From NCBI RefSeq assembly GCF_000143415.4, contig NW_003314286.1, positions 79,826-143,825 on the forward strand: a DNA stretch of 64,000 nt, read 5' to 3'. The notes beneath the pieces were generated by a model, which saw only the letters and a program-made list of their open reading frames with translations, was not told the origin of the DNA and searched no databases. Of the stretch, positions 4,810 through 52,258 are shown in pieces. Numbering within the stretch: position 1 is the stretch's first letter; each line of letters begins with the position of its first letter. The stretch is from Selaginella moellendorffii (lineage: Eukaryota; Plantae; Lycopodiophyta). The position numbers and the translations under genes were made by a program.

Positions 4810-4909
4810 NNNNNNNNNNNNNNNNNNNNNNNNNNNNNNNNNNNNNNNNNNNNNNNNNNNNNNNNNNNNNNNNNNNNNNNNNNNNNNNNNNNNNNNNNNN
4901 NNNNNNNNN
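4810..4909. other. Assembly gap (100 N)
   Basis: Run of N. Confidence 1.
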
Positions 4910-40376: not shown

Positions 40377-42196
40377 ATGACGAGCATGGATTCATCGTCT
40401 CTCACCTGGGAGCTCACAGGGAAGCGATGGATGCGCGTAGGGTTCTTCACGGCGGCTGTCACATTTGCGGTGTGGATTCTCTGGGAGATCGCTCTGCCGC
40501 AAGCATCCTGGGGTTCCTTGATCGCCGCCGCCTTCAGGTTCTTGCTCTTTCAGCTAGCGCAGCTCGTCTTCTTGCTAGGGCAGCGATTGGTAGTCCAGCC
40601 GGAGGACCCTAACTCGTCCTCCATCGCCGACACGCTGCTGGGAATGGTATTGCTGGGCAAGGCGGCATTGGGCTGGCCGCTAGACCCAGATTACACGTAT
40701 CTCGTCGTCCAGAGGATCCGGGTTTTGAGAAACAGTTTCGTTCTCGCTATCGCAACCATGGCCTCTGGATTCCTGTCGCTATGCGCACTCACGCTCTCAG
40801 TGAGATCGAAGAGCTCGTTCTTCATCGACATGGGTGTTCGTGGTGCCGCGCTGGGGCTGTGCTACATTTTTCTCTACACTTGGGGGAAGGGCCATTTGCT
40901 CAAGTTTCCGATCATCCAGGTTCGAGGGAAAAACACTTGTTTTTGATACTTCTTTCGCTCACAAACTCTTTTTCGTGTTGTTTTTGTGTTCTCAGAGACA
41001 AGTTTACTTCAGTATGAAACTGGGGATGACTTTGGCATTGCGCTCGGCACTTAGAATGGCAGTGCTCTCCATTCCAGTCGCGGAGGTCCTCGTAAGATCC
41101 TTGCACCGATGTCTTGCTGGTAACTGGGGGCCCTTCTCTTTGTGGCACCAAGTCATCTATGTTGTCGGAGCGTTCTTTGTCGCTCTGATCTGGAACTTGT
41201 GCTGCCACTTTATCCAGGTATGCATGACGCGAGTCTTTTTGTGATCCGTTTTGTTGATATGTGTGTTTGTGATTCTTCAGGTGATTCACACGAGACGGTT
41301 CGTGTTTGCGCCACCCCCGGGATCAGCTGCAGCCGAGACTAATCCGACAGAGCCGCTTCTTTCGGTTTTGGAAGACGACGAGGACTTGATCAGGCAGTAC
41401 CTTGGATTCCTGGACCTGTTCATCCTATCAGGAGTCTCCGAGATAAATGTTGAGGCCTGGCGGCGAGCGGCATTCTTCGAAGAAAGCGGTGAAGCTTACA
41501 AGAAGGTCATCACGCTCTGTCTGCGACCACTTGACAGGCTTACAGTGAGGCTCCTGAAGGGTCTGGAAAGTGCGCAAGTAGGTGGTACCAAAGATCACAT
41601 ACCGGGTGCTGAACAAGGTGTGCATGCCAAGGAGAACTTTCAAGAATTGCAAGTAAGTAGCATGTTTTTTCAGACTGAATTGTACTCATCAGCTCCATGC
41701 TTGGCAGCTTTGCTCGTGGTGTGCGGGCATTGTGTCTTCGCTGACGGCATTCTCACGCACCGAAGACCGATATGGCGTTGCGCAGCTAACTGGCTCCAAT
41801 GCGGCGGTACTGGCATCGCTCATATCCTGTCTGCTTATCCTGGACGTCTACCTGGGACGTCGTAGTGGTTTCGGAGCTTTGAGCCTCGTCAGCCCGAACG
41901 GGATCCGGTGGGCCGTGCCGTTCCGAGGAGCTCTGCTGGACGCGGATAGGAAGCAAAGCGCTCTTTTCAAGAAGAAGTCTCTCCAGCACAGGAAAGCACA
42001 CGTAATGGCGGATGTTCTTCGGACAGCAATCTACAGGATCGTGGCAGTTTTCAGGGAGGAGATGGTAGTGACTGGCTCTGGCACCGTCTCGTATGCTCTC
42101 GCGGAACGAGACTGGCTGAGTAGGAACAAGCCTCTCTTTGGGACACCCGAGATGCACCTCCAGAAGCTGGGACAGTTTATAGAGTTCCAGGAGTAG
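40377..42196 (+). CDS. NDC1: Nucleoporin NDC1-like membrane protein, multi-exon
   Basis: Several TM helices, then [62 protein letters not shown]. Confidence 0.8.
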
Positions 42197-42325
42197 GATG
42201 GAAGAAGACACAGTTTTGACGGGATTTGGTAATGTTGCGGTTTAGATGTATCAACAGGGTTGTGAGGAGAGCTTCCTCGACTTGTTAGAAGGTTCGTCTT
42301 TCTTTTTTCTTTCTACACTTGTGTT

Positions 42326-43054
42326 TTATGCGCTGATCGGAGCTCTTGGTGGTGCAGCTGAGTCGGGATCACTCGTTTGATAGCTATAAGGTGGCGCTTC
42401 GCTTTGGAGCTGCATCACCGACGTCATGACTTGCGCGAGCTCCGCCTGCGTGTGGTTGAGCTCCAGCATATGGGACAGGACAGAGTTGAAGGACTGGAGC
42501 GTCTCCTGGACGCTCTGGAGCGTGCTGAGGTTGTCCTTGCTGCCGGACTGGGACTGGATCGCCTCGAGACCCTCCACCAGGGACAGTGCCTCGATCACTT
42601 GGAGCTGGGTCTGATTGAGATCGGGGAAGGACAGGGATTCTCGGATGCTCTGGAGCTGCTGCTGGGTCTCCTGGATGGCTTCACGCAGGTCAATGAGCAT
42701 ATCTCTAGTGAGGACGCCAGTGTTGTCACCACTCCCCGAAGGTTGATCACCACTGCTGCCACTTCCGCCGCCGCCGTTGTCACCACCACCACCACTACCG
42801 CCACCTCCTCCACCTCCTCCTCCGCCAGGTCCGCCACCACCGCCAGGACCATTTGGACCTCTCGGATCCGTCACATTTGAAGAAGATCCACGAGAACCAC
42901 CTGGAAACAAAAGCAAGCACCAGATCGAGTTGGAAAGGTAAAAGATCGAGCTCTCACTTTCGGTGGTATTTTCGCCAAGACAACTTCTCCAGTGGATGGA
43001 ATGGAGCAGCAGGAGCACCAGCAGCAGTAGCTGGAAATTCGAAGCCGTGATCAT
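42326..43054 (-). CDS. Secreted Gly-rich/helical protein A (unknown family); intron 42901-42957
   Basis: Signal MITASNFQLLLLVLLLLHSIHWRSCLG; DPRGPNGPGGGG...DQPSG; helical DMLIDLREAI...LAQVMTSVMQLQSE; TATA near 43110. Confidence 0.85.
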   Translation of the reverse strand: MITASNFQLLLLVLLLLHSIHWRSCLGENTTESESSIFYLSNSIWCLLLFPGGSRGSSSNVTDPRGPNGPGGGGGPGGGGGGGGGGSGGGGDNGGGGSGSSGDQPSGSGDNTGVLTRDMLIDLREAIQETQQQLQSIRESLSFPDLNQTQLQVIEALSLVEGLEAIQSQSGSKDNLSTLQSVQETLQSFNSVLSHMLELNHTQAELAQVMTSVMQLQSEAPPYSYQTSDPDSAAPPRAPISA

Positions 43055-43284
43055 CCTGAGAGATTGGCAGTAGCAGGCATGAGACTCGAAGTGGGCCAAA
43101 GTTTCATCCATATATAAGACTGGTCGAGGAAGCGTGTCTTTCTCGATCCAAATTTTGTGGAACATGTCCTTTGGGTTGTCTTGCCAGTACTGGAGTGCCT
43201 TTCTCGTGAAAGCACACACTTCTTTCTAAAGTCAAACTCGTCAGACTATAGTCAACTTAAGTCAAATCGTATAAGAAATCTACT

Positions 43285-43974
43285 CTAGATTCCTAGGGGC
43301 GGCGCCGCTCTTGGCGAGGAGGCTCGATCCGGGTCGCGGGCCTGGAAGCTAGCGGGCGGCGTATCGCTCTGGAGCTCGATGATCGAGGCCATGACCTGGG
43401 CGAGATCTTCCTGCGTCTGGTTGAGCCCCAGCATCAGGGAGAGGACATTGTTGAAGTACTCGAGAGTCTCCTGGATGGCCTTGAGCGTGTTCAAGCTGTT
43501 CTTGCTGCTTGCCTGGAGATCCTCAAGCCCCTCCACCAGCGACAGCGCCTCCACGACCTGGAGCTGGGTGGCATTCAAGGTCGGGAAGGAGAGCGACTGC
43601 CGGATGCTCTGGAGCTGCTCCTGGGCCTCCCCGATCGCGTCGCGGAGATCGATGAGCATGTCCATGTTGAGGATCCCGTTCTCGTCACCTGATGGTTGAC
43701 CACCACCACCACCACCACCACCACCACCGGCACCCCCACCTCCCGGTTGACCGCCGCCGCCGCCAGGACCATTCGGACCTCCCGGGCCTCTTGGATCAGT
43801 CATGTTGGAGGAACCACCTATGAAGAACCCAAGAAATCGATGTCACCAAAGAAATGTATGGTGGTTTTTACCATTCTGGGTGGTGGAGTTTGTGCTGCTA
43901 CTAGCGTTTCCCGAGTGGATCCAGTGGGCGAGCAGCAGTAGCAGGAGACTGGACGTCCAAATCTTGAGAATCAT
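43285..43974 (-). CDS. Secreted Gly-rich/helical protein B, tandem paralog of A; intron 43818-43871
   Basis: Signal MILKIWTSSLLLLLLAHWIHSG; DPRGPGGPNGPGGGG...GQPSG; helical domain highly similar to A. Confidence 0.85.
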
Positions 43975-44235
43975 CGCAAAGAAATGCTTGGGCGAATGTG
44001 TTTGAGGGCGTGAGTTTCTTATACCGGGGAATGGATGCAATCATAGAGCATGTCCTTTGGGTTGCCAAGCTAATCACTGAATCATTGATCCACATAGAAC
44101 GTCTCCGTGAATCCCAGCGAATATACTCCATGTAGCCCTAATTTTGACCACGTTTGAATACTCCATAAACCCTAATTTGACTATGTTTGACTTGATGAAT
44201 ATTCGAAGGATATAGGTTTTGGGTTTGTGTCGGCT

Positions 44236-46077
44236 ATGGCGGTGGTGGGAGCGCTACTGCTCGTGGCGGCGGCGGTGGTCTTGTTCCTGGCGCGGCGCTG
44301 GGAGTGCAAGCGGGCGATCGCATTCTTCCATCCCTACACCAACGATGGGGGCGGCGGTGAGCGCGTCCTGTGGTGCGCCGTCCGGGCCGTCCAGGAGATG
44401 TTTTCCGATGTCCCTTGCGCGATCTACACTGGGGATGAGGCTACGCCCTCGTCACTGGCAGCTCGAGCATGGGAGAAATTCGGTGTCAAGCTCCATTCGC
44501 CTCCTCAGGTAAAATTCTCTCTAGTTCTTAGTTGTTGTTAGCTCGGTAAAATTCTTCTAGTTCTTCTTGATGTGGTCGATCTCATGCCTGGATCTTCTAG
44601 TCCATTCGTGAGTCTAGATGAGTGAGCATTCTCTTTGTCACGAACGAAGTTTGCGTGAGAGTCGATAAGCATGCCTGGAACTTTTAGCTCTGATCGATCG
44701 TGATTCTTTCTACAGGTTGTGAAACTGCGAACCAGGAATCTGGTTGATCCATCGAACTATCCACACTTCACACTTCTCTGCCAGTCTTTGGGCTCCATAG
44801 TTCTTGGATTGGAAGCACTCGTGAGGCTCAGGCCAGTCTTGTTCTTCGACACAAGCGGCTATGCCTTCACTTATCCCCTCGCAAGGCTCTTTGGCTGCAA
44901 GGTGGCGTGCTACACTCACTACCCGACCATCAGCTCCGACATGGTGTCGCGAGTTTCCAATCGCTCGTCGCTCTACAACAACAGTGGAGTTATCGCGCGC
45001 AGGCAAGTATCGTGTTGAACGTTGGCGTGTTTCTTTTCGTAGTGACTTCGTGCGTTTTCCAGCTTTTTGTTATCAACTGGGAAGATTGTTTACTACGAAT
45101 TGATGGCCTTGATGTATGGACTAGCAGGGAGATGTGCTAATCTGGCGATGGTGAACTCGTCCTGGACACTATCCCACATAGAGAAGTTGTGGAAGGGAGC
45201 ACGGATTGTGCGAGTTTATCCTCCGTGCAACACCGAGTCATTGCAGGTATGGAAGAGATCTTCTTACGTTTTCCTCTACTTGATAGAGGCATCCATCTTT
45301 TCTTCAGGAACTTCCGCTGGAGAGGAGCGAGCGTGAGCTTTATTTCATATCGGTCGCCCAGTTCCGTCCAGAGAAGGTAAATCCTCCCTTCTCTTCTGGT
45401 GCATCTCCTGACGCTTTCGTTTTCTGGAAGAACCACGACCTTCAAGTGGAAGCTTTCGCTATGGCCCTCGAGAAAGTTAGTGCTGAGAAACGTCCCAGGC
45501 TCAAGCTTGTGGGAAGCTGCCGAAATGAAGAGGACGCGAAGAGGCTGTCGGATCTAAAGTCTCTGTGCGCCAAGTTTGGAATCCAAGATCACGTGGACTT
45601 CCATGAGAATATATCTTACACGTAAGTCTTTTTTGGAGAAGTTTGCTCGCGACGCTCATCAGTTGTCTCTCCAGCGCGTTGCGAGACTTGCTTGGAGGGG
45701 CCATAGCAGGCATCCACTTCATGATCGACGAGCACTTCGGGATCAGCGTTGTGGAATACATGGCAGCAGGAGCGATCCCAATCGGTACGTTGTGCTCGTT
45801 CAGTTTCTAGCAAAAGGTCTTGAGTTCTCGGCAATTTGCAGCTCACAACTCCGCCGGTCCAAGGATGGATATTGTGGTGGACGAAGATGGCGGCCAGAAA
45901 ACCGGTTTCCTCGCAGCAACAGTCCCGGAGCTCGCGAGCAAAATGGTCGAAGTGCTCTCCATGGTAAGCTCAGAGCGCCTGGAAATCGCCAAGGCTGCTC
46001 GGAGGCGATGCCACAGATTTTCCGAGAGGCAATTCAACGACAGCTTCAAGCAAGCCATGACGATGTTCCATCTCTAG
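44236..46077 (+). CDS. ALG11: Alpha-1,2-mannosyltransferase ALG11, multi-exon
   Basis: [84 protein letters not shown]. Confidence 0.95.
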
Positions 46078-46183
46078 AGAAGCGCAGCTTGGCAGAGGAG
46101 AGGATTGGAAAAACATTGCATTACCAAAACTTACGAACGAGAAAAAGGAAAACTTAACAAGAGGTACCTCTTGTGTTCCTGGA

Positions 46184-47859
46184 CTACCTCACTGTTACAA
46201 TGTCGTCTATCTTGAGGATCATGCGGACGCACTCGGTCGCCAGGCTCACGGCGCTGGTGCTCACCAGCAGCGGCTGCACCACATTCTCTTCCAGGATGTT
46301 TGTGATCTGGCCCTTCCTCACGTTGATCCCGGTGTTGACCTCTCCATTCGCGTGATGGTTGCGGAGCTCCGTCACGATGGTGATGGGATTCAGCCCCGCG
46401 TTCTCGGCTAGAGTGTAGGGGATCACCTCCAGAGCCTCCGCGAAAGCGCGCACGCAGTAGCTCTCCATCCCCTGTAAAGTTTTGGCCCACGCTCCAAGCT
46501 GTCTTGACACTTCGATCTCTGGAGCTCCACCACCTTGCCATCGAAGAAACATTAGTTCTCTGGAAATCTATCGCTCGAACGAAAGAAAACTACGCTCCTC
46601 GAGAAGAAACACTTACCAGCGATGAGGAAACGTTTGTTGACAAGGCACCGCACGACACAGAGAGCGTCGTGCAAGCTCCGCTCGGCTTCGTCGAGAACCA
46701 GCTGGTTCGATCCACGAACCAAGATGGTAGTCGTCCGGCCCATGTTTTTGATCCCGGATATCTTGACGATCCTCCCGTCGCCCACCGAGACCTCCTCCAC
46801 AAGCTCGGCCTGTCCCAGCTTCTCGGCTCGGAAGTGCTCGATGTTGGCGATGGGAAGACAGTTGAGCGTCTTGGAGATGAACTCGATCTCGTCCCTCTCC
46901 ACGTCTTTCACCACCAAGATCTTGGCCTTGGCAAGATAATGCAGCGACAGCTCCGTCACCGCGTCCCGGAGGATGCTCTTCTGGATGAGGAGAACGTTAC
47001 ACCCGGTGGCCTTGATCTTCTTTATCATTCCCAGGATGTGGTTCCTCTCCTCCTTGAGAATCCTGTCCATCTGCGTGTAGTCCGAGACGATGACGTTCTG
47101 CTCGATATCCGTCTTGGGTGGCGAGATCTGGAACTGGATCAAACCGATCTTCGCGTTCTCGACACGAGTCGGCCCACCGGCAGTGTGGCTCGCCTTCTTG
47201 TCGAAAACCAGCCCCTTGATCATCTCGGTGTCGTCCACGGTGCCACCGAGCTTCTTTATCACCTTAATATCTCGCAAGTCCACCGAGTCGGGCCTCGCCG
47301 GATCCACGACGTTGAGCACCGCGTCCACGGCCAGCGGCGCCAGCAGCGACGAGTACTGGCTCACCACCTTGCTGTTGAGCGACGTGCTCGCGTTCTTGAC
47401 GAGCGCCTCGCGGTCCGAGAGCTCCACCGGTATCGCCATGGACGTGAGCACCTCCACCGCCTTGAGTGACGCGCGGTGGAAGGCGTCCGAGATGATGGTC
47501 GGGTGGACGCCCTTGCCGAGGAGGGCGATGCACTGCTTGAGCAAGGCGCCGGCGATCACCACCACGGTGGTGGTTCCATCGCCCGCCACGATGTCCTGGC
47601 TCTTGGAGAGCTCCACCAGCATTTTGGCGGCGGGCTGGAGCACCTCCATCTTGAGGAGGATGGTGGCGCCGTCGTTGGTGATGATTACCTCGCCGCTGGA
47701 GGTGGAGAGCATCTTGTCCATGCCGCGCGGACCCAGGCTCGTCCGCACGGCGTCCGCCACGGCCTTGGCGGCCATGATGTTGGCCTGCCGCACGTCATCC
47801 TTGCGCTTGTTGTCCACGTACGTCTCTGTCTTACCGGAGATCATCGGCGCCTCTGGCAT
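46184..47859 (-). CDS. CCT4: T-complex protein 1 delta subunit, one intron (~46538-46616)
   Basis: [59 protein letters not shown]. Confidence 0.97.
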
Positions 47860-48074
47860 TATCGCGTCGCCGCCCTCGTCCTCGCGCCTAGCTCGCTCTC
47901 TTCTTGGAGCTCGAGGCTGCCCTAACCCTAGAACCCCGATCGCGATCGCGGCCGTTGATCGGGCGACCGCGGGATGTGCGCGGGATATTCGTGGTTTTAC
48001 CCGGCAATTTTTAGGGCGCGAGGGGGATTGCGCGAGGAGCACAGCGCCGCGGCTTTTGAGCTGTTTCGATCGGG

Positions 48075-49479
48075 ATGGGAGCCACGGGCTCCAAGCTCGA
48101 GAAGGCGCTGGGCGATCAGTTCCCGGAGGGTGAGCGCTATTTCGGCCTGGAGAATTTCGGCAATACTTGCTACTGCAATAGCGTATTACAGGTAAATCTC
48201 TTCCTTGCTCTTCTCTTCGAGTTTTTCCTTCCCTTTGAGTTCTTCCTCTGCTACAAAAATTTCTTTTTTGTGTGTCTTTAGGCATTGTACTTTTGCATCC
48301 CATTCAGGGACCAGCTGCTGGATTACTACGGTCGAATCAAGACGGTCGGAGAAGCCGAAGAGAATTTACTGACTTGCTTAGCGGATCTCTTCACACAGGT
48401 ATCTCGCTCAATCTGTTCCCAAGGTGATGTTTCAATCCTCCCTTTCCAGATAAACTCTCAAAAGAAGAAGACGGGTGTTATAGCTCCAAAGAGATTCGTG
48501 CAGAGGGTAAAGAAGCAGCACGAGCTCTTCCGGAGCTACATGCACCAGGTATTTTTCCATCCTCTCTGAAATAAGCACTCAAAACGAACAAAGCGCGCGA
48601 TACTTACAGGACGCACACGAGTTTCTAAACTTTTTGCTGAATCAACTAGTTGAAGCTCTGGAGAAGGAGGCCAAGTCGGACCCGACAGCCCCAGCATCCC
48701 CAGAGAAAAAGTCTAGCGATAATGGAGCAACTGGAGAAGAGCATCCGCTTACGTGGGTCCACAAAATCTTCCAGGTTTGCGACTTTGTCAAGCTTTTAGC
48801 TCCAGCTTACTCACTCAGTCATGAATCCACAGGGGTGTCTCACCAACGAGACGAGGTGCCTGCGCTGCGAGACGATAACAGCAAAGGACGAGAAGTTCCT
48901 CGATCTCAGCCTCGACATCGAGCAGAACAGCTCCGTCACAAGCTGCCTCCGCAACTTCAGCTCCACCGAGACGCTCATCGCCGATGACAAGTTCTTTTGC
49001 GACAAATGCTGCAGGTTTCTATCTCTTCCTTCTCCCCTCGCCGTAACACCCCGCTGGCTCGCAGCTTGCAGGAAGCGCAAAAGCGGATGAAGATCAAGAC
49101 GCAGCCTCGCATCCTCGCGCTCCACCTCAAGCGCTTCAAGTACATGGAACAGCTGGGCCGATACAAGAAGCTCTCGTACAGGGTGGTGTTCCCGCTGGAG
49201 CTGAAGCTGTGCAACACGGCCGAGGATGCTCCGGGGTCCGAGTCGGAGTACTCGCTGTTCGCAGTGGTGGTGCACGTAGGGAGCGGCCCCAACCACGGCC
49301 ACTACGTGAGCCTGGTCAAGAGCCACAACCACTGGCTGTTCTTCGACGACGAGAACGTAGAGATGATCGACGAGAGTTATGTGCAAACGTTCTTCGGCTC
49401 CACGCAGGAGTACTCCAACAACACAGACCACGGCTACATCCTCTTCTATGAGTGCCTGGATCCCGCAAAGGCATCGTGA
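48075..49479 (+). CDS. UBP3/4: Ubiquitin-specific protease UBP3/UBP4 (USP12/46-like), multi-exon
   Basis: [29 protein letters not shown] (Cys box), [26 protein letters not shown] (His box). Confidence 0.96.
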
Positions 49480-49690
49480 GAGAAGGGGGGTAAATTTTTT
49501 TCTCTCGTTTTTCTTCCTTCTTTTTTTGTTTCAAGATGATGACGATGATGGTATGTCCAAAGTTATTCCATGTTTTTGATCGCTAACAATGCCGACTACG
49601 ACCGTTGACTTATTTCGGGGAGACTAGAGTTAACTTATTTACTTTGACAAGCGTTGTCTTTATGGACTTATTTTCTTTGACAATCGATGA

Positions 49691-50467
49691 CTATGGTCCT
49701 CCACCGCCGGTGACCTCGCTCTCGAGCGTGGCGAGCGTGTTGACCGCGTCTGCGAGCTGCTGCTGGACTTGACTGGCGGCAAGCATGCACGACACTAGTT
49801 GACTGCTGCTGTTGAGCGCGCTCTGGACGTCTCCCAGGATGGTCAATTGCTGCTGACCGCTGGGTTGACCGCCCGGGCGGCCTCCCGGCCCCCCGGGGCC
49901 ATTGGGTCCGCCGCCAGGTCCACCAGGTCCACCGCCCGGGCCACCCGGGCCACCAGGTCCTCCAAGCCCGCCGCCACTGCTGCCATCGCTGCCGCTATCG
50001 CTCCCCTCTCGCGCCTCTGGAGCTTCCGCGATGGAAGATAGGCCGTAAGAGACCGAGGACGTGGGAGGCTTTGCCGAGGAGACGGTGGACGAGTTTGAAG
50101 ATTTCAGGGTGCTGTAGAGGAGCTGGTCGACCGTGTTCACTATGGACATGGCGCTGGCCAGCTGGTTTTGGGAGGCCTCGAGCGAGTCCAAGGAGATCAA
50201 GGAAGTGGCTTGCTGGAGCTCCACCATGGAGGCGTTGATCGCGCTCTGGAGCTCCTCGAGCATGTCCATCTCCTGCTCCTCGGTGCTCTCGCTGGAGACG
50301 TTGGAGAGAAGGAATCGGCGAGGCCCTCCTGTGAGATCGTAAAAACACCACGAATGTTTTTAGACCGTGAGAAACTCTATACCTCCAGGGGATCCATGTC
50401 CCGGAATGAGAAGCAGCGCCACTGCTAGAAGAAGGAGAAGAGCTCTCGCTGTGATCGGCGATGCCAT
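49691..50467 (-). CDS. Secreted Gly-rich/helical protein C; intron 50329-50382
   Basis: Signal MASPITARALLLLLAVALLLIPGHG; GPRRFLL; helical module 1; central (GPGG)n plus GQPSG; helical module 2; ends GGGGP. Confidence 0.85.
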
Positions 50468-50789
50468 GATACGCATCTCTGTTGTGTTTAGAAGAGTGAC
50501 ACCTCGCGGCTTTAAAGGCCAGAGTCATCCGGCTTCCAAGGGAGATGACACTAAACACACGCGATGCATGGGCGCTCCCAGCGCTCTCGCTCTCATCATT
50601 TGCAACGTAAAGATTTTGGTTCTTGGGTTTCTTGGGTTGACGTGAATTCACCTTACGTTATACCAAGAATATATCAGTATCTTTCGCAATTACACGAATC
50701 AAGATCATTTATTCTATGATGGTTTTTCTCATACAAATAAATGTTGGGAGAAGAAGTCGATTGACATGAGAAGGAGTGCTTGCTTGGAT

Positions 50790-51400
50790 CTATGGGCCTC
50801 CTCCAGGCCCAAACCCAGGGCCGCCTCCACCACCATTGTTGTTCAGCTGGAAGTAAGCCGCGAGCGTGGAGATCAAGTCCATGGCGGAGCCGAGCTGGGA
50901 GGCGGTGGTGTTGAGTGACGAGAGAGCCAATCCCACGCTCCCATCCTGCGACTGCACGTCGCTGAGGCCGGACAAGACCCCGATGGCGCCGGTCAGCTGC
51001 TCGTTGACCGTGGCGTTGAGCGCCGCCACCGAGTCCAGTGCCTGGTCAACGCTCTTCCGGAGCGAGCCCAGCGCGGAGACGAGCGACAGTGCCTGGTTAA
51101 CCTGCGTCTCCAGGCTGTTCAGGCTCGAGAAGCTCGTCACGGCCTGGGTGATTTGCGCCTGGGTGGCGTTGACCGCGCTCTGGACCTGGAGCAGCATCTG
51201 GAGTTCTTGGTTTTGGTCCTGGTTTCCACCGCCGCCGGGGCCGCGAGGGCCGTCTGGATCACCAACTTTTGGGGGAAACCACGAAAGCTTTGAGCAATGC
51301 TAGAGATCTAGAGAGGCTTGGGAGACTTACCGGGTTGCGCGAGCTTGGGAGCCGCGAGAAGCGTCGCGAGGAGGAGGACGAGGCTCATTTCCCTGGCCAT
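50790..51400 (-). CDS. Secreted Gly-rich/helical protein D; intron 51266-51330
   Basis: Signal MAREMSLVLLLATLLAAPKLA; GDPDGPRGPGGGG; helical MLLQVQSAVNATQAQ...; ends GGGGGPGFGPGGGP. Confidence 0.82.
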
Positions 51401-51719
51401 TCCTTTCGATTGGATCAAGAAGTGGAGCTTGGCGTGGAGATGGAGGAGTTCTTCTCGCGGATTTAAATGGGGGAGAGGCACTAAAGGCATGAATCTTTGC
51501 TGCCGCTTTCCAACGCGTCAAACCAAGGGTCATGATCGTTAGGAGGGGGAACACAAATGATGCTCGTAGACACACTCGAGCAATCACGTCAAGAGCTCCA
51601 CTCGAGTGATGAGTATCATCCAGAAACCAAGGAATTGCACTTCCATCCTGGAAGAACTTTTTAAACCCAACTTAAGAAACGTGAGGTTCTATGCTCTCTT
51701 AGGTAGGGTTGCAAAGGCT

Positions 51720-52258
51720 ATGGAAGCCACGCACGTCTTCCCAGGACTTGGCTCGTCATGGGTCTCGAGACCCTCGGCAGCATTCTNNNNNNNNNNNNNN
51801 NNNNNNNNNNNNNNNNNNNNNNNNNNNNNNNNNNNNNNNNNNNNNNNNNNNNNNNNNNNNNNNNNNNNNNNNNNNNNNNNNNNNNNCTTGCAGGAAGAAG
51901 AAGACCACTCGCGATTCGCATTGTTGGTCGTGCGAGCAGCAATCGAGCGAGCAGCAACACGGGCAGTAGCAGCAGTAGCAGCAGTGGCGGCGGTGGCGGT
52001 GGCAAATCCAAATCCAAGAATTTGATCGAGATGGAAGGAGCAGTGACCGAGTCGCTACCCAACGCCATGTTCCGGGTGAGTCTAGACAATGGGTGTGAGG
52101 TGCTGGCGCATGTCTCGGGCAAGATTCGTAAGAACTTCATCCGGATGCTTCCAGGGGACCGCGTCAAGATCGAATTGAGCCCCTACGATCTCTCCAAGGG
52201 AAGGATTACGTATCGGCTTCGCGCGGACAGCACACACCAGGAAACCAATACCAGCTAG
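51720..52258 (+). CDS. infA: Nucleus-encoded organellar (probably plastid) translation initiation factor IF-1 with transit-peptide-like extension, interrupted by gap
   Basis: [23 protein letters not shown]...[36 protein letters not shown]; Ser/Arg-rich N-terminal extension. Confidence 0.9.
51787..51886. other. Assembly gap (100 N)
   Basis: Run of N. Confidence 1.

What the first reader, a model, noticed from the sequence alone, without database searches (positions are those of the whole stretch)
42326..51400. Four-gene family of secreted GPGG/poly-Gly + amphipathic helical proteins: candidate undescribed extracellular structural system
Seen: four minus-strand genes in two tandem pairs (A 42326-43054 and B 43285-43974; C 49691-50467 and D 50790-51400), separated by ALG11, CCT4 and UBP. 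Each has a signal-peptide exon ending in a phase-1 intron (57, 54, 54, 65 nt), (P)RGP/GPGG/poly-Gly tracts, and a ~105-120 aa Gln/Ser/Leu/Ala-rich domain with heptad-like hydrophobic spacing. That domain has almost no Cys or aromatic residues and carries repeated N-glycosylation sequons (NQT, NHT, NAT, NAS, NTT). All four frames are intact despite strong A/B versus C/D divergence. Established: GPGG(X) repeats form elastic segments in flagelliform silk, and classical plant glycine-rich wall proteins lack such a helical domain. Inference: a lineage-specific self-assembling or surface-active extracellular protein set (adhesive, mucilage or spore-wall matrix), possibly hetero-oligomerising through helix bundles. 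I do not recognise the domain.
Basis: partly seen in the sequence, partly recalled or inferred. Interest (0 to 1): 0.85.

Follow-up and report, generated by a model that had tools for sequence, protein, structure and literature searches.

The report
Selaginella-only secreted glycine/helix protein family
Four neighbouring genes of the spikemoss Selaginella moellendorffii are real, spliced and conserved. They encode a small family of probably secreted, acidic proteins (a flexible glycine/proline stretch plus a helical repeat) with no detectable relatives elsewhere and no evidence yet for any function.

Summary
The window is Selaginella moellendorffii. The introns of A and B are seen spliced in RNA contigs. 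The models of B, C and D equal GenBank gene models, and A is annotated only as a 124-aa fragment. Both haplotypes keep all four frames. A versus B gives dN/dS 0.23. With the Gly tracts removed, A/B and C/D are still related (BLASTP 1e-8 to 8e-4; hhalign 4e-5).

The helical part is built from a degenerate repeat of about 45 aa carrying a recurring (L/V/I)-N-x-(T/S) sequon. A and B have two copies and D about three. C has one on each side of its Ser-rich linker and Gly/Pro tract.

Pfam, PDB, the ESM Atlas, fold searches and an exhaustive HMMER scan of 1.84 billion proteins found no relative outside this species.

In the runs laid on A/B, expression is sample-restricted. In two stranded runs B is silent, and A is covered only by an antisense RNA, the likely 3'UTR of the neighbouring NDC1-like gene.

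The proposed function (extracellular self-assembly) is untested inference. This is a genuine orphan family of moderate interest.

The parts
42326..43054 (-). Gene A (223 aa). Exon 1 42958-43054 (signal-peptide-like), intron 42901-42957 (57 nt, phase 1), exon 2 42326-42900. Gly/Pro tract 42728-42868, helical repeat domain 42401-42703, Pro-rich tail 42329-42400.
   Evidence: Sequence. The spliced joint 42900>42958 is in run X1 contigs for both haplotype forms. The intron is 56 nt in the other haplotype, so the frame is kept only by splicing. GenBank holds only a 124-aa fragment, P0001.
43285..43974 (-). Gene B (211 aa, SELMODRAFT_414772 / EFJ24223.1). Exon 1 43872-43974, intron 43818-43871 (54 nt, phase 1), exon 2 43285-43817. 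Gly/Pro tract 43687-43797, helical domain 43366-43662, tail 43288-43365.
   Evidence: The spliced product is identical to P0002. The joint 43817>43872 is in X1 (depth 118) and X7 (4.3) contigs. It is 71% identical to A over the aligned exon-2 products, with dN/dS 0.23.
49691..50467 (-). Gene C (240 aa, allele of SELMODRAFT_404926 / XP_002963609.1). Exon 1 50383-50467, intron 50329-50382 (54 nt, phase 1), exon 2 49691-50328. N-terminal helical module 50105-50272, Ser-rich linker 49976-50104, Gly/Pro tract 49856-49975, C-terminal helical module 49709-49855.
   Evidence: The other-haplotype allele P0003 has the same intron model. The stretch is held by RNA runs. No reads were laid on it, so its splicing was not seen directly.
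50790..51400 (-). Gene D (181 aa). Exon 1 51331-51400, intron 51266-51330 (65 nt, phase 1, donor GTAAGT), exon 2 50790-51265. Gly/Pro tract 51225-51260, helical domain 50844-51206, Gly tail 50793-50843.
   Evidence: A 181-aa gene is called at the same place in the other haplotype, L001 9065-9675. The signal exon and exon 2 are in different frames, so only splicing joins them. The stretch is held by RNA runs; splicing was not seen directly.
43055..43454 (-). Upstream region of A, overlapping the 3' end of B, with CAACCCAAAGGACATG at -123 and a TATA-like box. The same 16-mer lies at -89 of B (upstream region 43975-44374). AACCCAA is also at -171 and -162 of C, and in reverse orientation at -270 of D.
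   Evidence: Six of the window's 12 AACCCAA sites (both strands) fall in the 4 x 400 nt upstream of these genes. This is a candidate shared cis-element and is untested.
42250..43050 (+). Plus-strand RNA antisense to gene A, with a GT..AG intron at 42290-42355. It is most likely the long 3'UTR of the upstream NDC1-like gene, whose CDS ends at 42196.
   Evidence: Stranded runs X21 and X22 give depth 15-38 on the same strand as the plus-strand gene ALG11, and 0-0.5 on the sense strand of A. The joint 42289>42356 is in all four runs. X7 has a 2074-nt contig ending in 42356-42839. NDC1 Pfam match is weak.

Best explanation
A-D are a Selaginella moellendorffii-restricted (as far as can be searched) family of four protein-coding genes that arose by local duplication.

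Shown:
- Each gene has a signal-peptide-like first exon, a phase-1 intron at the same position, and a second exon.
- The second exon encodes an acidic protein (pI about 4.1) with no Cys, or one in C.
- The protein consists of a length-variable Gly/Pro spacer and one to three copies of a degenerate helical repeat of about 45 residues. The repeat recurrently carries an (L/V/I)-N-x-(T/S) sequon.
- The genes are under purifying selection and intact in both haplotypes.
- A and B are spliced as predicted, and their sense transcripts are present in some samples and absent in others.

Inferred:
- The products enter the secretory pathway, are N-glycosylated on the repeat sequons and are released to the apoplast. 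There is no TM segment, no C-terminal hydrophobic tail of the GPI type and no H/KDEL.
- There the Leu/Gln/Ser-rich helices associate with each other, as homo- or hetero-oligomeric bundles or coiled coils. The Gly/Pro tract serves as a disordered spacer.
- The set therefore most likely acts as a tissue-specific extracellular matrix or surface-coating component rather than as an enzyme or receptor.
For: - Gene models and reading frames.
- Identity with GenBank models.
- Spliced A and B transcripts.
- Intron length 57 versus 56 nt between haplotypes.
- dN/dS of A versus B is 0.23 at dS about 1.1, equal in the helical and N-terminal parts.
- All four genes are intact at 97.1% haplotype identity.
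- Family relationship without the Gly tracts.
- Internal repeat of about 45 aa with the sequon aligned (z 5.7 in A, 5.9 in D).
- Helical prediction (A: three helices; D: helix 12-104 at pLDDT about 80, plus 110-144).
- Hydrophobic period 3.3-3.5.
- pI, absence of TM segments, Cys and aromatic counts.
- No hit in Pfam, PDB, the Atlas, 5.8 billion word-indexed proteins or 1.84 billion exhaustively scanned proteins.
- B is silent and A is antisense-only in X21/X22, while B is deeper than CCT delta in X1.
- Shared promoter motif.
Against: - No signal-peptide predictor was available, so secretion rests on hydrophobicity and architecture.
- No protein-level evidence exists for glycosylation, secretion or oligomerisation.
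- AlphaFold tertiary packing is unreliable (pTM 0.34-0.35). A long lone helix is also what AlphaFold gives for many disordered or helical low-complexity sequences.
- Periodicity is not significant in A or in C's N-terminal module. Sequon enrichment is weak, and the sequon Asn shows no consistent helix face.
- The internal repeat is not significant in B (z about 1).
- Splicing of C and D was not seen in reads.
- Run metadata are coded, so the expressing tissue is unknown.
- Each of the three family clusters on record (P0001-P0003) has one member on one contig. Transcript-derived proteins of this or other lycophytes are probably not in the collection, so 'lineage-restricted' is only weakly tested.
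Confidence: 0.55

Rival explanations
1. The proteins are precursors of small secreted signalling peptides. The helical region would be a variable pro-domain, and the active part the short conserved Pro-rich C-terminus (A/B: PP-x-S-Y/F-Q..DPD-x-A..PRA-x-P; C/D: ...GGGP), released by proteolysis as in CLE, CEP, IDA or PSY precursors.
For: The proteins are small and have a signal-peptide-like N-terminus. A and B have a Pro-rich C-terminal tail that is partly conserved. C and D both end in GGGP. The comparison with peptide-hormone precursors rests on my own knowledge.
Against: The helical region is as constrained as the rest (dN/dS 0.23 in both parts). It is also the part conserved across all four genes, whereas the tails of A/B and C/D are unrelated. 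Known precursors conserve the peptide and let the pro-region drift. No known peptide motif or Pfam family was hit.
Confidence: 0.1
2. They are surface-active, lipid- or polymer-coating amphipathic helix-bundle proteins. They would work like exchangeable apolipoproteins (apoLp-III) or pollen-coat proteins, opening their bundle on hydrophobic extracellular surfaces such as cuticle, sporopollenin or wax.
For: The composition is Cys-free, aromatic-poor and rich in Leu, Gln, Ser and Ala, and the proteins are predicted to be all-helical. The nearest ESM Atlas feature clusters carry ApoLp-III in a minority of members, but with scores of only 0.59-0.65, which is within noise.
Against: PF07464 was not hit at E<=1. 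Hydrophobic moments around the sequons are modest, 0.11-0.36. The Atlas scores are far below the 0.9 lead threshold. Fold searches return only generic helical proteins.
Confidence: 0.12
3. They are ordinary members of the plant glycine-rich cell-wall protein (GRP) superfamily and need no new family.
For: They have a signal-peptide-like N-terminus plus a poly-Gly/GPGG tract. Gly tract length is polymorphic between haplotypes, as is usual for such repeats.
Against: Gly is only 15-17% of the mature protein and confined to 12-47 residues. The conserved, selected part is the non-Gly helical repeat. There is no Cys-rich or oleosin domain and no GRP-type hit in any search.
Confidence: 0.08
4. They are fast-evolving orphan ORFs of little or no function, transcribed as by-products of neighbouring genes (B to A read-through, NDC1 3'UTR antisense).
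For: There are no homologues anywhere. One X1 contig runs from B across the intergenic region into A exon 1. The reads over A in X21/X22 are antisense only.
Against: Minus-strand GT..AG introns are removed in X1 and X7. dN/dS is 0.23 across a saturated dS. All four frames are intact in two haplotypes that differ by 2.9%. Intron phase and position are conserved in all four genes. B is deeper than CCT delta in X1.
Confidence: 0.07

Closest known systems
Plant secreted glycine-rich proteins (GRP classes I-III and V; own knowledge of the classification)
   Same: N-terminal signal peptide followed by a Gly-rich, length-polymorphic low-complexity tract. Small, secreted, and usually tissue-specific.
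   Different: The Gly tract is short (12-47 aa; 15-17% Gly overall). The conserved module is a Cys-free helical repeat of about 45 aa that is absent from described GRP classes. No sequence hit to any GRP.
Coiled-coil silk fibroins of bees, ants and hornets (four small tandem paralogues that co-assemble; own knowledge, not tested)
   Same: Four clustered paralogous genes. They encode small secreted proteins whose core is a non-repetitive, Ala/Ser/Leu-rich, Cys-poor helical region with heptad-like periodicity, flanked by disordered ends.
   Different: No homology. The helical regions here are half as long (about 50-120 versus about 210 residues) and Gln/Leu-rich rather than Ala-rich. Periodicity is only partly significant. 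No evidence of fibre formation or gland-type expression.
Flagelliform spider silk GPGGX repeats
   Same: GPGG motifs occur in the spacer.
   Different: There are only 2-7 GPGG motifs per protein, mixed with plain poly-Gly (my count on the tract sequences), instead of long tandem pentapeptide arrays. No homology.
Apolipophorin-III / exchangeable apolipoprotein helix bundles (PF07464)
   Same: Cys-free, aromatic-poor, Leu/Gln/Ser/Ala-rich all-helical secreted protein of about 150-180 aa. Weak language-model feature resemblance.
   Different: No Pfam hit. Atlas scores 0.59-0.65 are within noise. No confident bundle model. Different kingdom.
Pectin methylesterase/invertase inhibitor domain (PF04043): the common plant secreted helical bundle
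   Same: Secreted plant protein of about 150 aa predicted to be all-helical.
   Different: PMEI is defined by four conserved Cys forming two disulfides (own knowledge). These proteins have 0-1 Cys and no Pfam hit.

Membership tests
Plant glycine-rich proteins (secreted classes I-III) | N-terminal signal peptide | tested here: met
   Each protein has a hydrophobic 9-aa core within its first 25 residues (KD 2.6-3.8), followed by small or polar residues. No dedicated predictor was run.
Plant glycine-rich proteins (secreted classes I-III) | Gly-rich repeats ((GGX)n, GGXXXGG) making up most of the mature protein | tested here: not met
   Gly is 15-17% of the mature protein, in tracts of 12-47 aa only.
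Plant glycine-rich proteins (class II / III) | Cys-rich C-terminus (class II) or oleosin domain (class III) | tested here: not met
   0-1 Cys and no Pfam domain.
Flagelliform-silk-type elastic GPGGX proteins | Long tandem arrays of GPGGX pentapeptides | tested here: not met
   2-7 GPGG motifs per protein, interspersed with poly-Gly (my count on the tract sequences).
Apolipophorin-III (PF07464) | Match to the family profile | tested here: not met
   No hit at E<=1 in Pfam for any of the four proteins.
Apolipophorin-III (PF07464) | Up-and-down five-helix amphipathic bundle | tested here: inconclusive
   AlphaFold gives 2-3 helices with pTM 0.34-0.35 and no reliable packing. muH around the sequons is 0.11-0.36.
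PMEI / invertase inhibitor (PF04043) | Profile match and four conserved Cys | tested here: not met
   No Pfam hit and 0-1 Cys.
LEA proteins | Profile match to a LEA family and extreme hydrophilicity | tested here: not met
   No Pfam hit. GRAVY is -0.04 to -0.61, with 16-19% Leu in the helical parts.
Coiled-coil proteins (generic) | Heptad (3.5-residue) hydrophobic periodicity above chance | tested here: inconclusive
   Significant in B, D and C's C-terminal module (P 0.006, 0.016, <0.001). Not significant in A (0.16) or C's N-terminal module (0.07). No multimer prediction was possible.
Lysozyme-like protein (RefSeq name of XP_002963609.1) | Any lysozyme or glycoside-hydrolase domain | tested here: not met
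   No Pfam domain in C. In the PDB profile search built from A, B, D and C's N-terminal module, nothing scored below E 0.013 and no lysozyme was listed. The name appears unsupported.

The most novel reading that the evidence does not exclude
The four paralogues are subunits of a lycophyte-specific, N-glycosylated hetero-oligomeric helical-bundle material. It would be a plant counterpart of coiled-coil silks, deposited in one specialised extracellular structure (for example sporangium or spore wall, ligule or rhizophore-tip mucilage). The Gly/Pro spacers would give elasticity and the family-specific promoter motif would give co-regulation.
Probability: 0.12. Interest if true: 0.65.

Novelty: new variant of a known kind. 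Interest (0 to 1): 0.33.

Why it matters
If the inference holds, this is a previously undescribed type of plant extracellular protein, a Gly/Pro spacer plus a glycosylated helical repeat, confined to a lycophyte. It would add to the short list of lineage-specific wall or matrix proteins outside seed plants. It would also give a compact four-gene system for studying how new secreted structural proteins arise by repeat shuffling. As it stands the gain is mainly annotational. There is one corrected gene model (A), one unsupported RefSeq name ('putative lysozyme-like protein'), and one sense/antisense overlap with a nucleoporin 3'UTR. Orphan secreted proteins are common in plant genomes, so without localisation or phenotype the finding is of moderate interest only.

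Tried and rejected
- Pfam on all four exon-2 products gave only sub-threshold helical noise, at best E 0.037.
- Word-indexed searches of 5.8 billion proteins, with A, with D, and with the family profile at E<=10, returned only the family's own entries.
- An exhaustive hmmsearch of 1.84 billion representatives returned the same entries plus one bacterial 1576-aa tandem-repeat protein, P0004. It matched in 6 stretches at 1.2e-6, and I reject it as a repeat-inflated false positive.
- A PDB profile search found nothing below E 0.013.
- The ESM Atlas feature search gave top scores of 0.65-0.66, which is within noise.
- Foldseek against AFDB clusters and the Atlas shape search on the two AlphaFold models returned only generic helical proteins such as FlgN, FliH and tropomyosin. 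These are uninformative because the models have pTM 0.34-0.35.
- tblastn of the family against the whole window found no fifth copy.
- Helical-wheel placement of the sequon Asn showed no consistent face.
- Literature searches found nothing: no hit for the locus tags, UniProt or GenBank ids, or Smo ids; no mention in the two supplementary files held for the Selaginella expression-atlas preprint; no paper on such GRPs in Selaginella.
- Earlier scan notes by words returned nothing.
- I did not look up the spliced full-length A, C or D proteins in the exact-match tools, because spliced products have no reference and long sequences must not be typed.
- Reads were laid on A/B, so C/D splicing was not checked in reads.
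Full report
**What is there.**
A is 43054-42958 + 42900-42326 (223 aa). B is 43974-43872 + 43817-43285 (211 aa). C is 50467-50383 + 50328-49691 (240 aa). D is 51400-51331 + 51265-50790 (181 aa).
- All four introns are phase 1 and lie at the same place, directly after the hydrophobic N-terminal exon.
- The genes between the pairs are ALG11 (PF15924_N, 1.9e-22), a TCP-1 chaperonin whose best PDB matches are all subunit delta (7.5e-166), and a UCH-type ubiquitin hydrolase.

**Organism and annotation.**
- B's spliced product is identical to GenBank EFJ24223.1, 'hypothetical protein SELMODRAFT_414772' of Selaginella moellendorffii.
- C has a near-identical allele, SELMODRAFT_404926 / XP_002963609.1. 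RefSeq calls it 'putative lysozyme-like protein', a name for which I found no support.
- A is on record only as a 124-aa fragment starting at an internal Met (P0001).
- Locus L001 (scaffold GL377568.1) is the other haplotype, 97.1% identical over 10.4 kb. It carries all four genes in the same order, including a called 181-aa gene at D's position.

**Are they real genes?**
- Run X1 (contigs) holds both the A joint (42900>42958, in two haplotype forms) and the B joint (43817>43872, depth 118). X7 holds the B joint.
- A's intron is 57 nt here, so it reads through in frame, but it is 56 nt in L001. Only the spliced form is in frame in both haplotypes.
- Nei-Gojobori dN/dS for A versus B is 0.23 at dS about 1.1. 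It is the same in the helical domain and in the N-terminal part.
- Between haplotypes the four genes differ by 2-4 amino-acid changes plus in-frame length changes in the Gly tracts.
- C and D stretches are held by many RNA runs, with up to 0.57 of sampled words. I had one read-laying run and spent it on A/B, so C/D splicing rests on sequence logic. There is a stop codon in C's intron, and D's two exons are in different frames. It also rests on the GenBank models.

**One family?**
- With Gly tracts left out, BLASTP gives A-D 7e-6, D-C 1e-8 and A-C 8e-4.
- Shuffle z-scores for C's N-terminal module are 10.8 versus D, 8.2 versus B and 5.3 versus A.
- hhalign of the A/B profile against the C/D profile gives E 4e-5, probability 70%.

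**Anatomy.**
- The helical region contains an internal repeat of about 45 residues (A: z 5.7; D: z 5.9; not significant in B). Each copy aligns an (L/V/I)-N-x-(T/S) sequon, for example LNQTQ/LNHTQ in A and VNATQ/LNATV/LNTTA in D.
- A and B have two units and D about three. C has one unit on each side of a Ser-rich linker plus Gly/Pro tract. This agrees with the earlier scan note that the Gly module has moved among the paralogues.
- A, B and C share a QPSG motif at the junction from spacer to helix. A, B and D share DP(R/D)GP just after the intron. C and D both end in GGGP.
- The mature proteins are acidic (pI 4.05-4.12) and have 0-1 Cys, no Trp, no TM-like segment after the N-terminus and no ER-retention motif.
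- AlphaFold predicts helices only. A gives three helices at mean pLDDT 60. D gives one long helix (12-104, pLDDT about 80) plus 110-144. Packing is unreliable (pTM 0.34-0.35).
- Hydrophobic periodicity peaks at 3.3-3.5 residues but beats shuffles only in B, D and C's C-terminal module. Sequon enrichment is modest. The sequon Asn has no consistent position relative to the hydrophobic face.

**Relatives.**
- None were found in Pfam, PDB profiles, the ESM Atlas, structure searches, 5.8 billion word-indexed proteins even at E<=10, or an exhaustive HMMER scan of 1.84 billion cluster representatives.
- The only outside hit is a bacterial tandem-repeat protein that I reject.
- Caveat: each of the three clusters on record has one member on one contig. 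Transcript-derived proteins of this or other lycophytes are probably not in the collection, so 'Selaginella-specific' means 'not detectable in what could be searched'.

**Expression.**
- X21 and X22 are stranded. CCT delta (minus strand) has first mates on + and ALG11 (plus strand) has them on -.
- In these runs B has zero depth. The 15-38x coverage over gene A lies on the strand of a plus-strand RNA. That RNA has a GT..AG intron at 42290-42355 and ends near 43050.
- The upstream plus-strand gene (weak Ndc1_Nup match) ends its CDS at 42196. An X7 contig of 2074 nt ends in 42356-42839. The antisense RNA is therefore most likely that gene's long 3'UTR.
- It follows that run 'shares' of about 0.40-0.45 for the A/B stretch may reflect this UTR alone. 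Only X1, X5 and X7 (0.67-0.70) clearly hold B. The same three runs hold C/D.
- Expression of A/B is thus sample-restricted and possibly shared with C/D. Run metadata are coded, so the tissue is unknown.
- Six of the window's twelve AACCCAA sites lie within 400 nt upstream of the four genes. C and D share a TTTAAA(G/T)CCGCGAG box. Both hint at common regulation.

**How it probably works.**
- Shown: a duplicated, selected, spliced gene family encoding signal-peptide-type, acidic, Cys-poor proteins made of a Gly/Pro spacer and a helical repeat with a conserved sequon.
- Inferred: secretion, N-glycosylation, and association through the Leu/Gln/Ser-rich helices, with the Gly/Pro tract as a flexible spacer. 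That would make a tissue-specific matrix or coating component.
- I put about 0.9 on the 'shown' part and about 0.3 on the extracellular self-association mechanism. The combined confidence for the statement as written is 0.55.
- Rivals: peptide-hormone precursor (0.10), apolipoprotein-like surface binder (0.12), ordinary GRP (0.08), near-functionless orphan (0.07).

**Comparison and verdict.**
- The proteins fail the defining features of classical GRPs, flagelliform-type GPGGX proteins, apoLp-III, PMEI and LEA families (see the membership table).
- They resemble coiled-coil insect silks only in gene number, clustering and composition, a comparison from my own knowledge that was not tested.
- This is a genuine, largely unannotated orphan family: a new variant among secreted Gly-tract proteins. 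There is no functional evidence, and interest is moderate to low.

Noticed in passing
window 42250-43050 (+), intron 42290-42355: A plus-strand RNA runs antisense across the whole of gene A. It is most likely the roughly 800-nt, intron-containing 3'UTR of the upstream NDC1-like nucleoporin gene (CDS ends at 42196). In the two stranded runs it is the only RNA over gene A.
   Followed up: partly
window 43055-43454, 43975-44374, 50468-50867, 51401-51800 (upstream of A, B, C, D): AACCCAA occurs 12 times in the 64-kb window, and 6 of these lie in the four 400-nt upstream regions. A and B share CAACCCAAAGGACATG. C and D share TTTAAA(G/T)CCGCGAG near the start. This is a candidate family-specific cis-element.
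   Followed up: partly
window 42728-42868, 43687-43797, 49856-49975 versus L001: The Gly/Pro tracts differ in length in frame between the two haplotypes. B has a run of ten Gly here versus five Gly plus Asp in L001, and there are small indels in A and C. The helical domain of A is identical in both haplotypes.
   Followed up: yes
GenBank/RefSeq records for A and C (P0001, P0003): Gene A is annotated only as a 124-aa fragment from an internal Met, without its signal exon and Gly tract. RefSeq names C 'putative lysozyme-like protein', although no lysozyme-type domain or match was found.
   Followed up: yes
window 42955-43976, run X1 contig of 957 nt: One RNA contig joins spliced B, the 230-nt B-A intergenic region and A's exon 1. 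This suggests overlapping UTRs or B-to-A read-through. A contig alone does not prove a single transcript.
   Followed up: no
window 44998-45124, 45621-45678, 45783-45844 (ALG11, + strand): There are minor alternative or non-canonical joints in ALG11. A 125-nt skip with GC..TA ends is seen in 3-6 reads. At 45783/45784 there are two competing acceptor forms, each in roughly half of the reads, possibly reflecting haplotype differences.
   Followed up: no
window 4810-4909 and 51787-51886: There are two 100-N assembly gaps. The second lies about 390 nt upstream of D's start codon, so D's distal promoter is incomplete in this assembly.
   Followed up: no
P0004 (bacterial protein, 1576 aa): This was the only non-Selaginella hit of the exhaustive profile search (E 1.2e-6, six stretches). 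It is a tandem-repeat surface-type protein and was judged a repeat-inflated false positive.
   Followed up: partly
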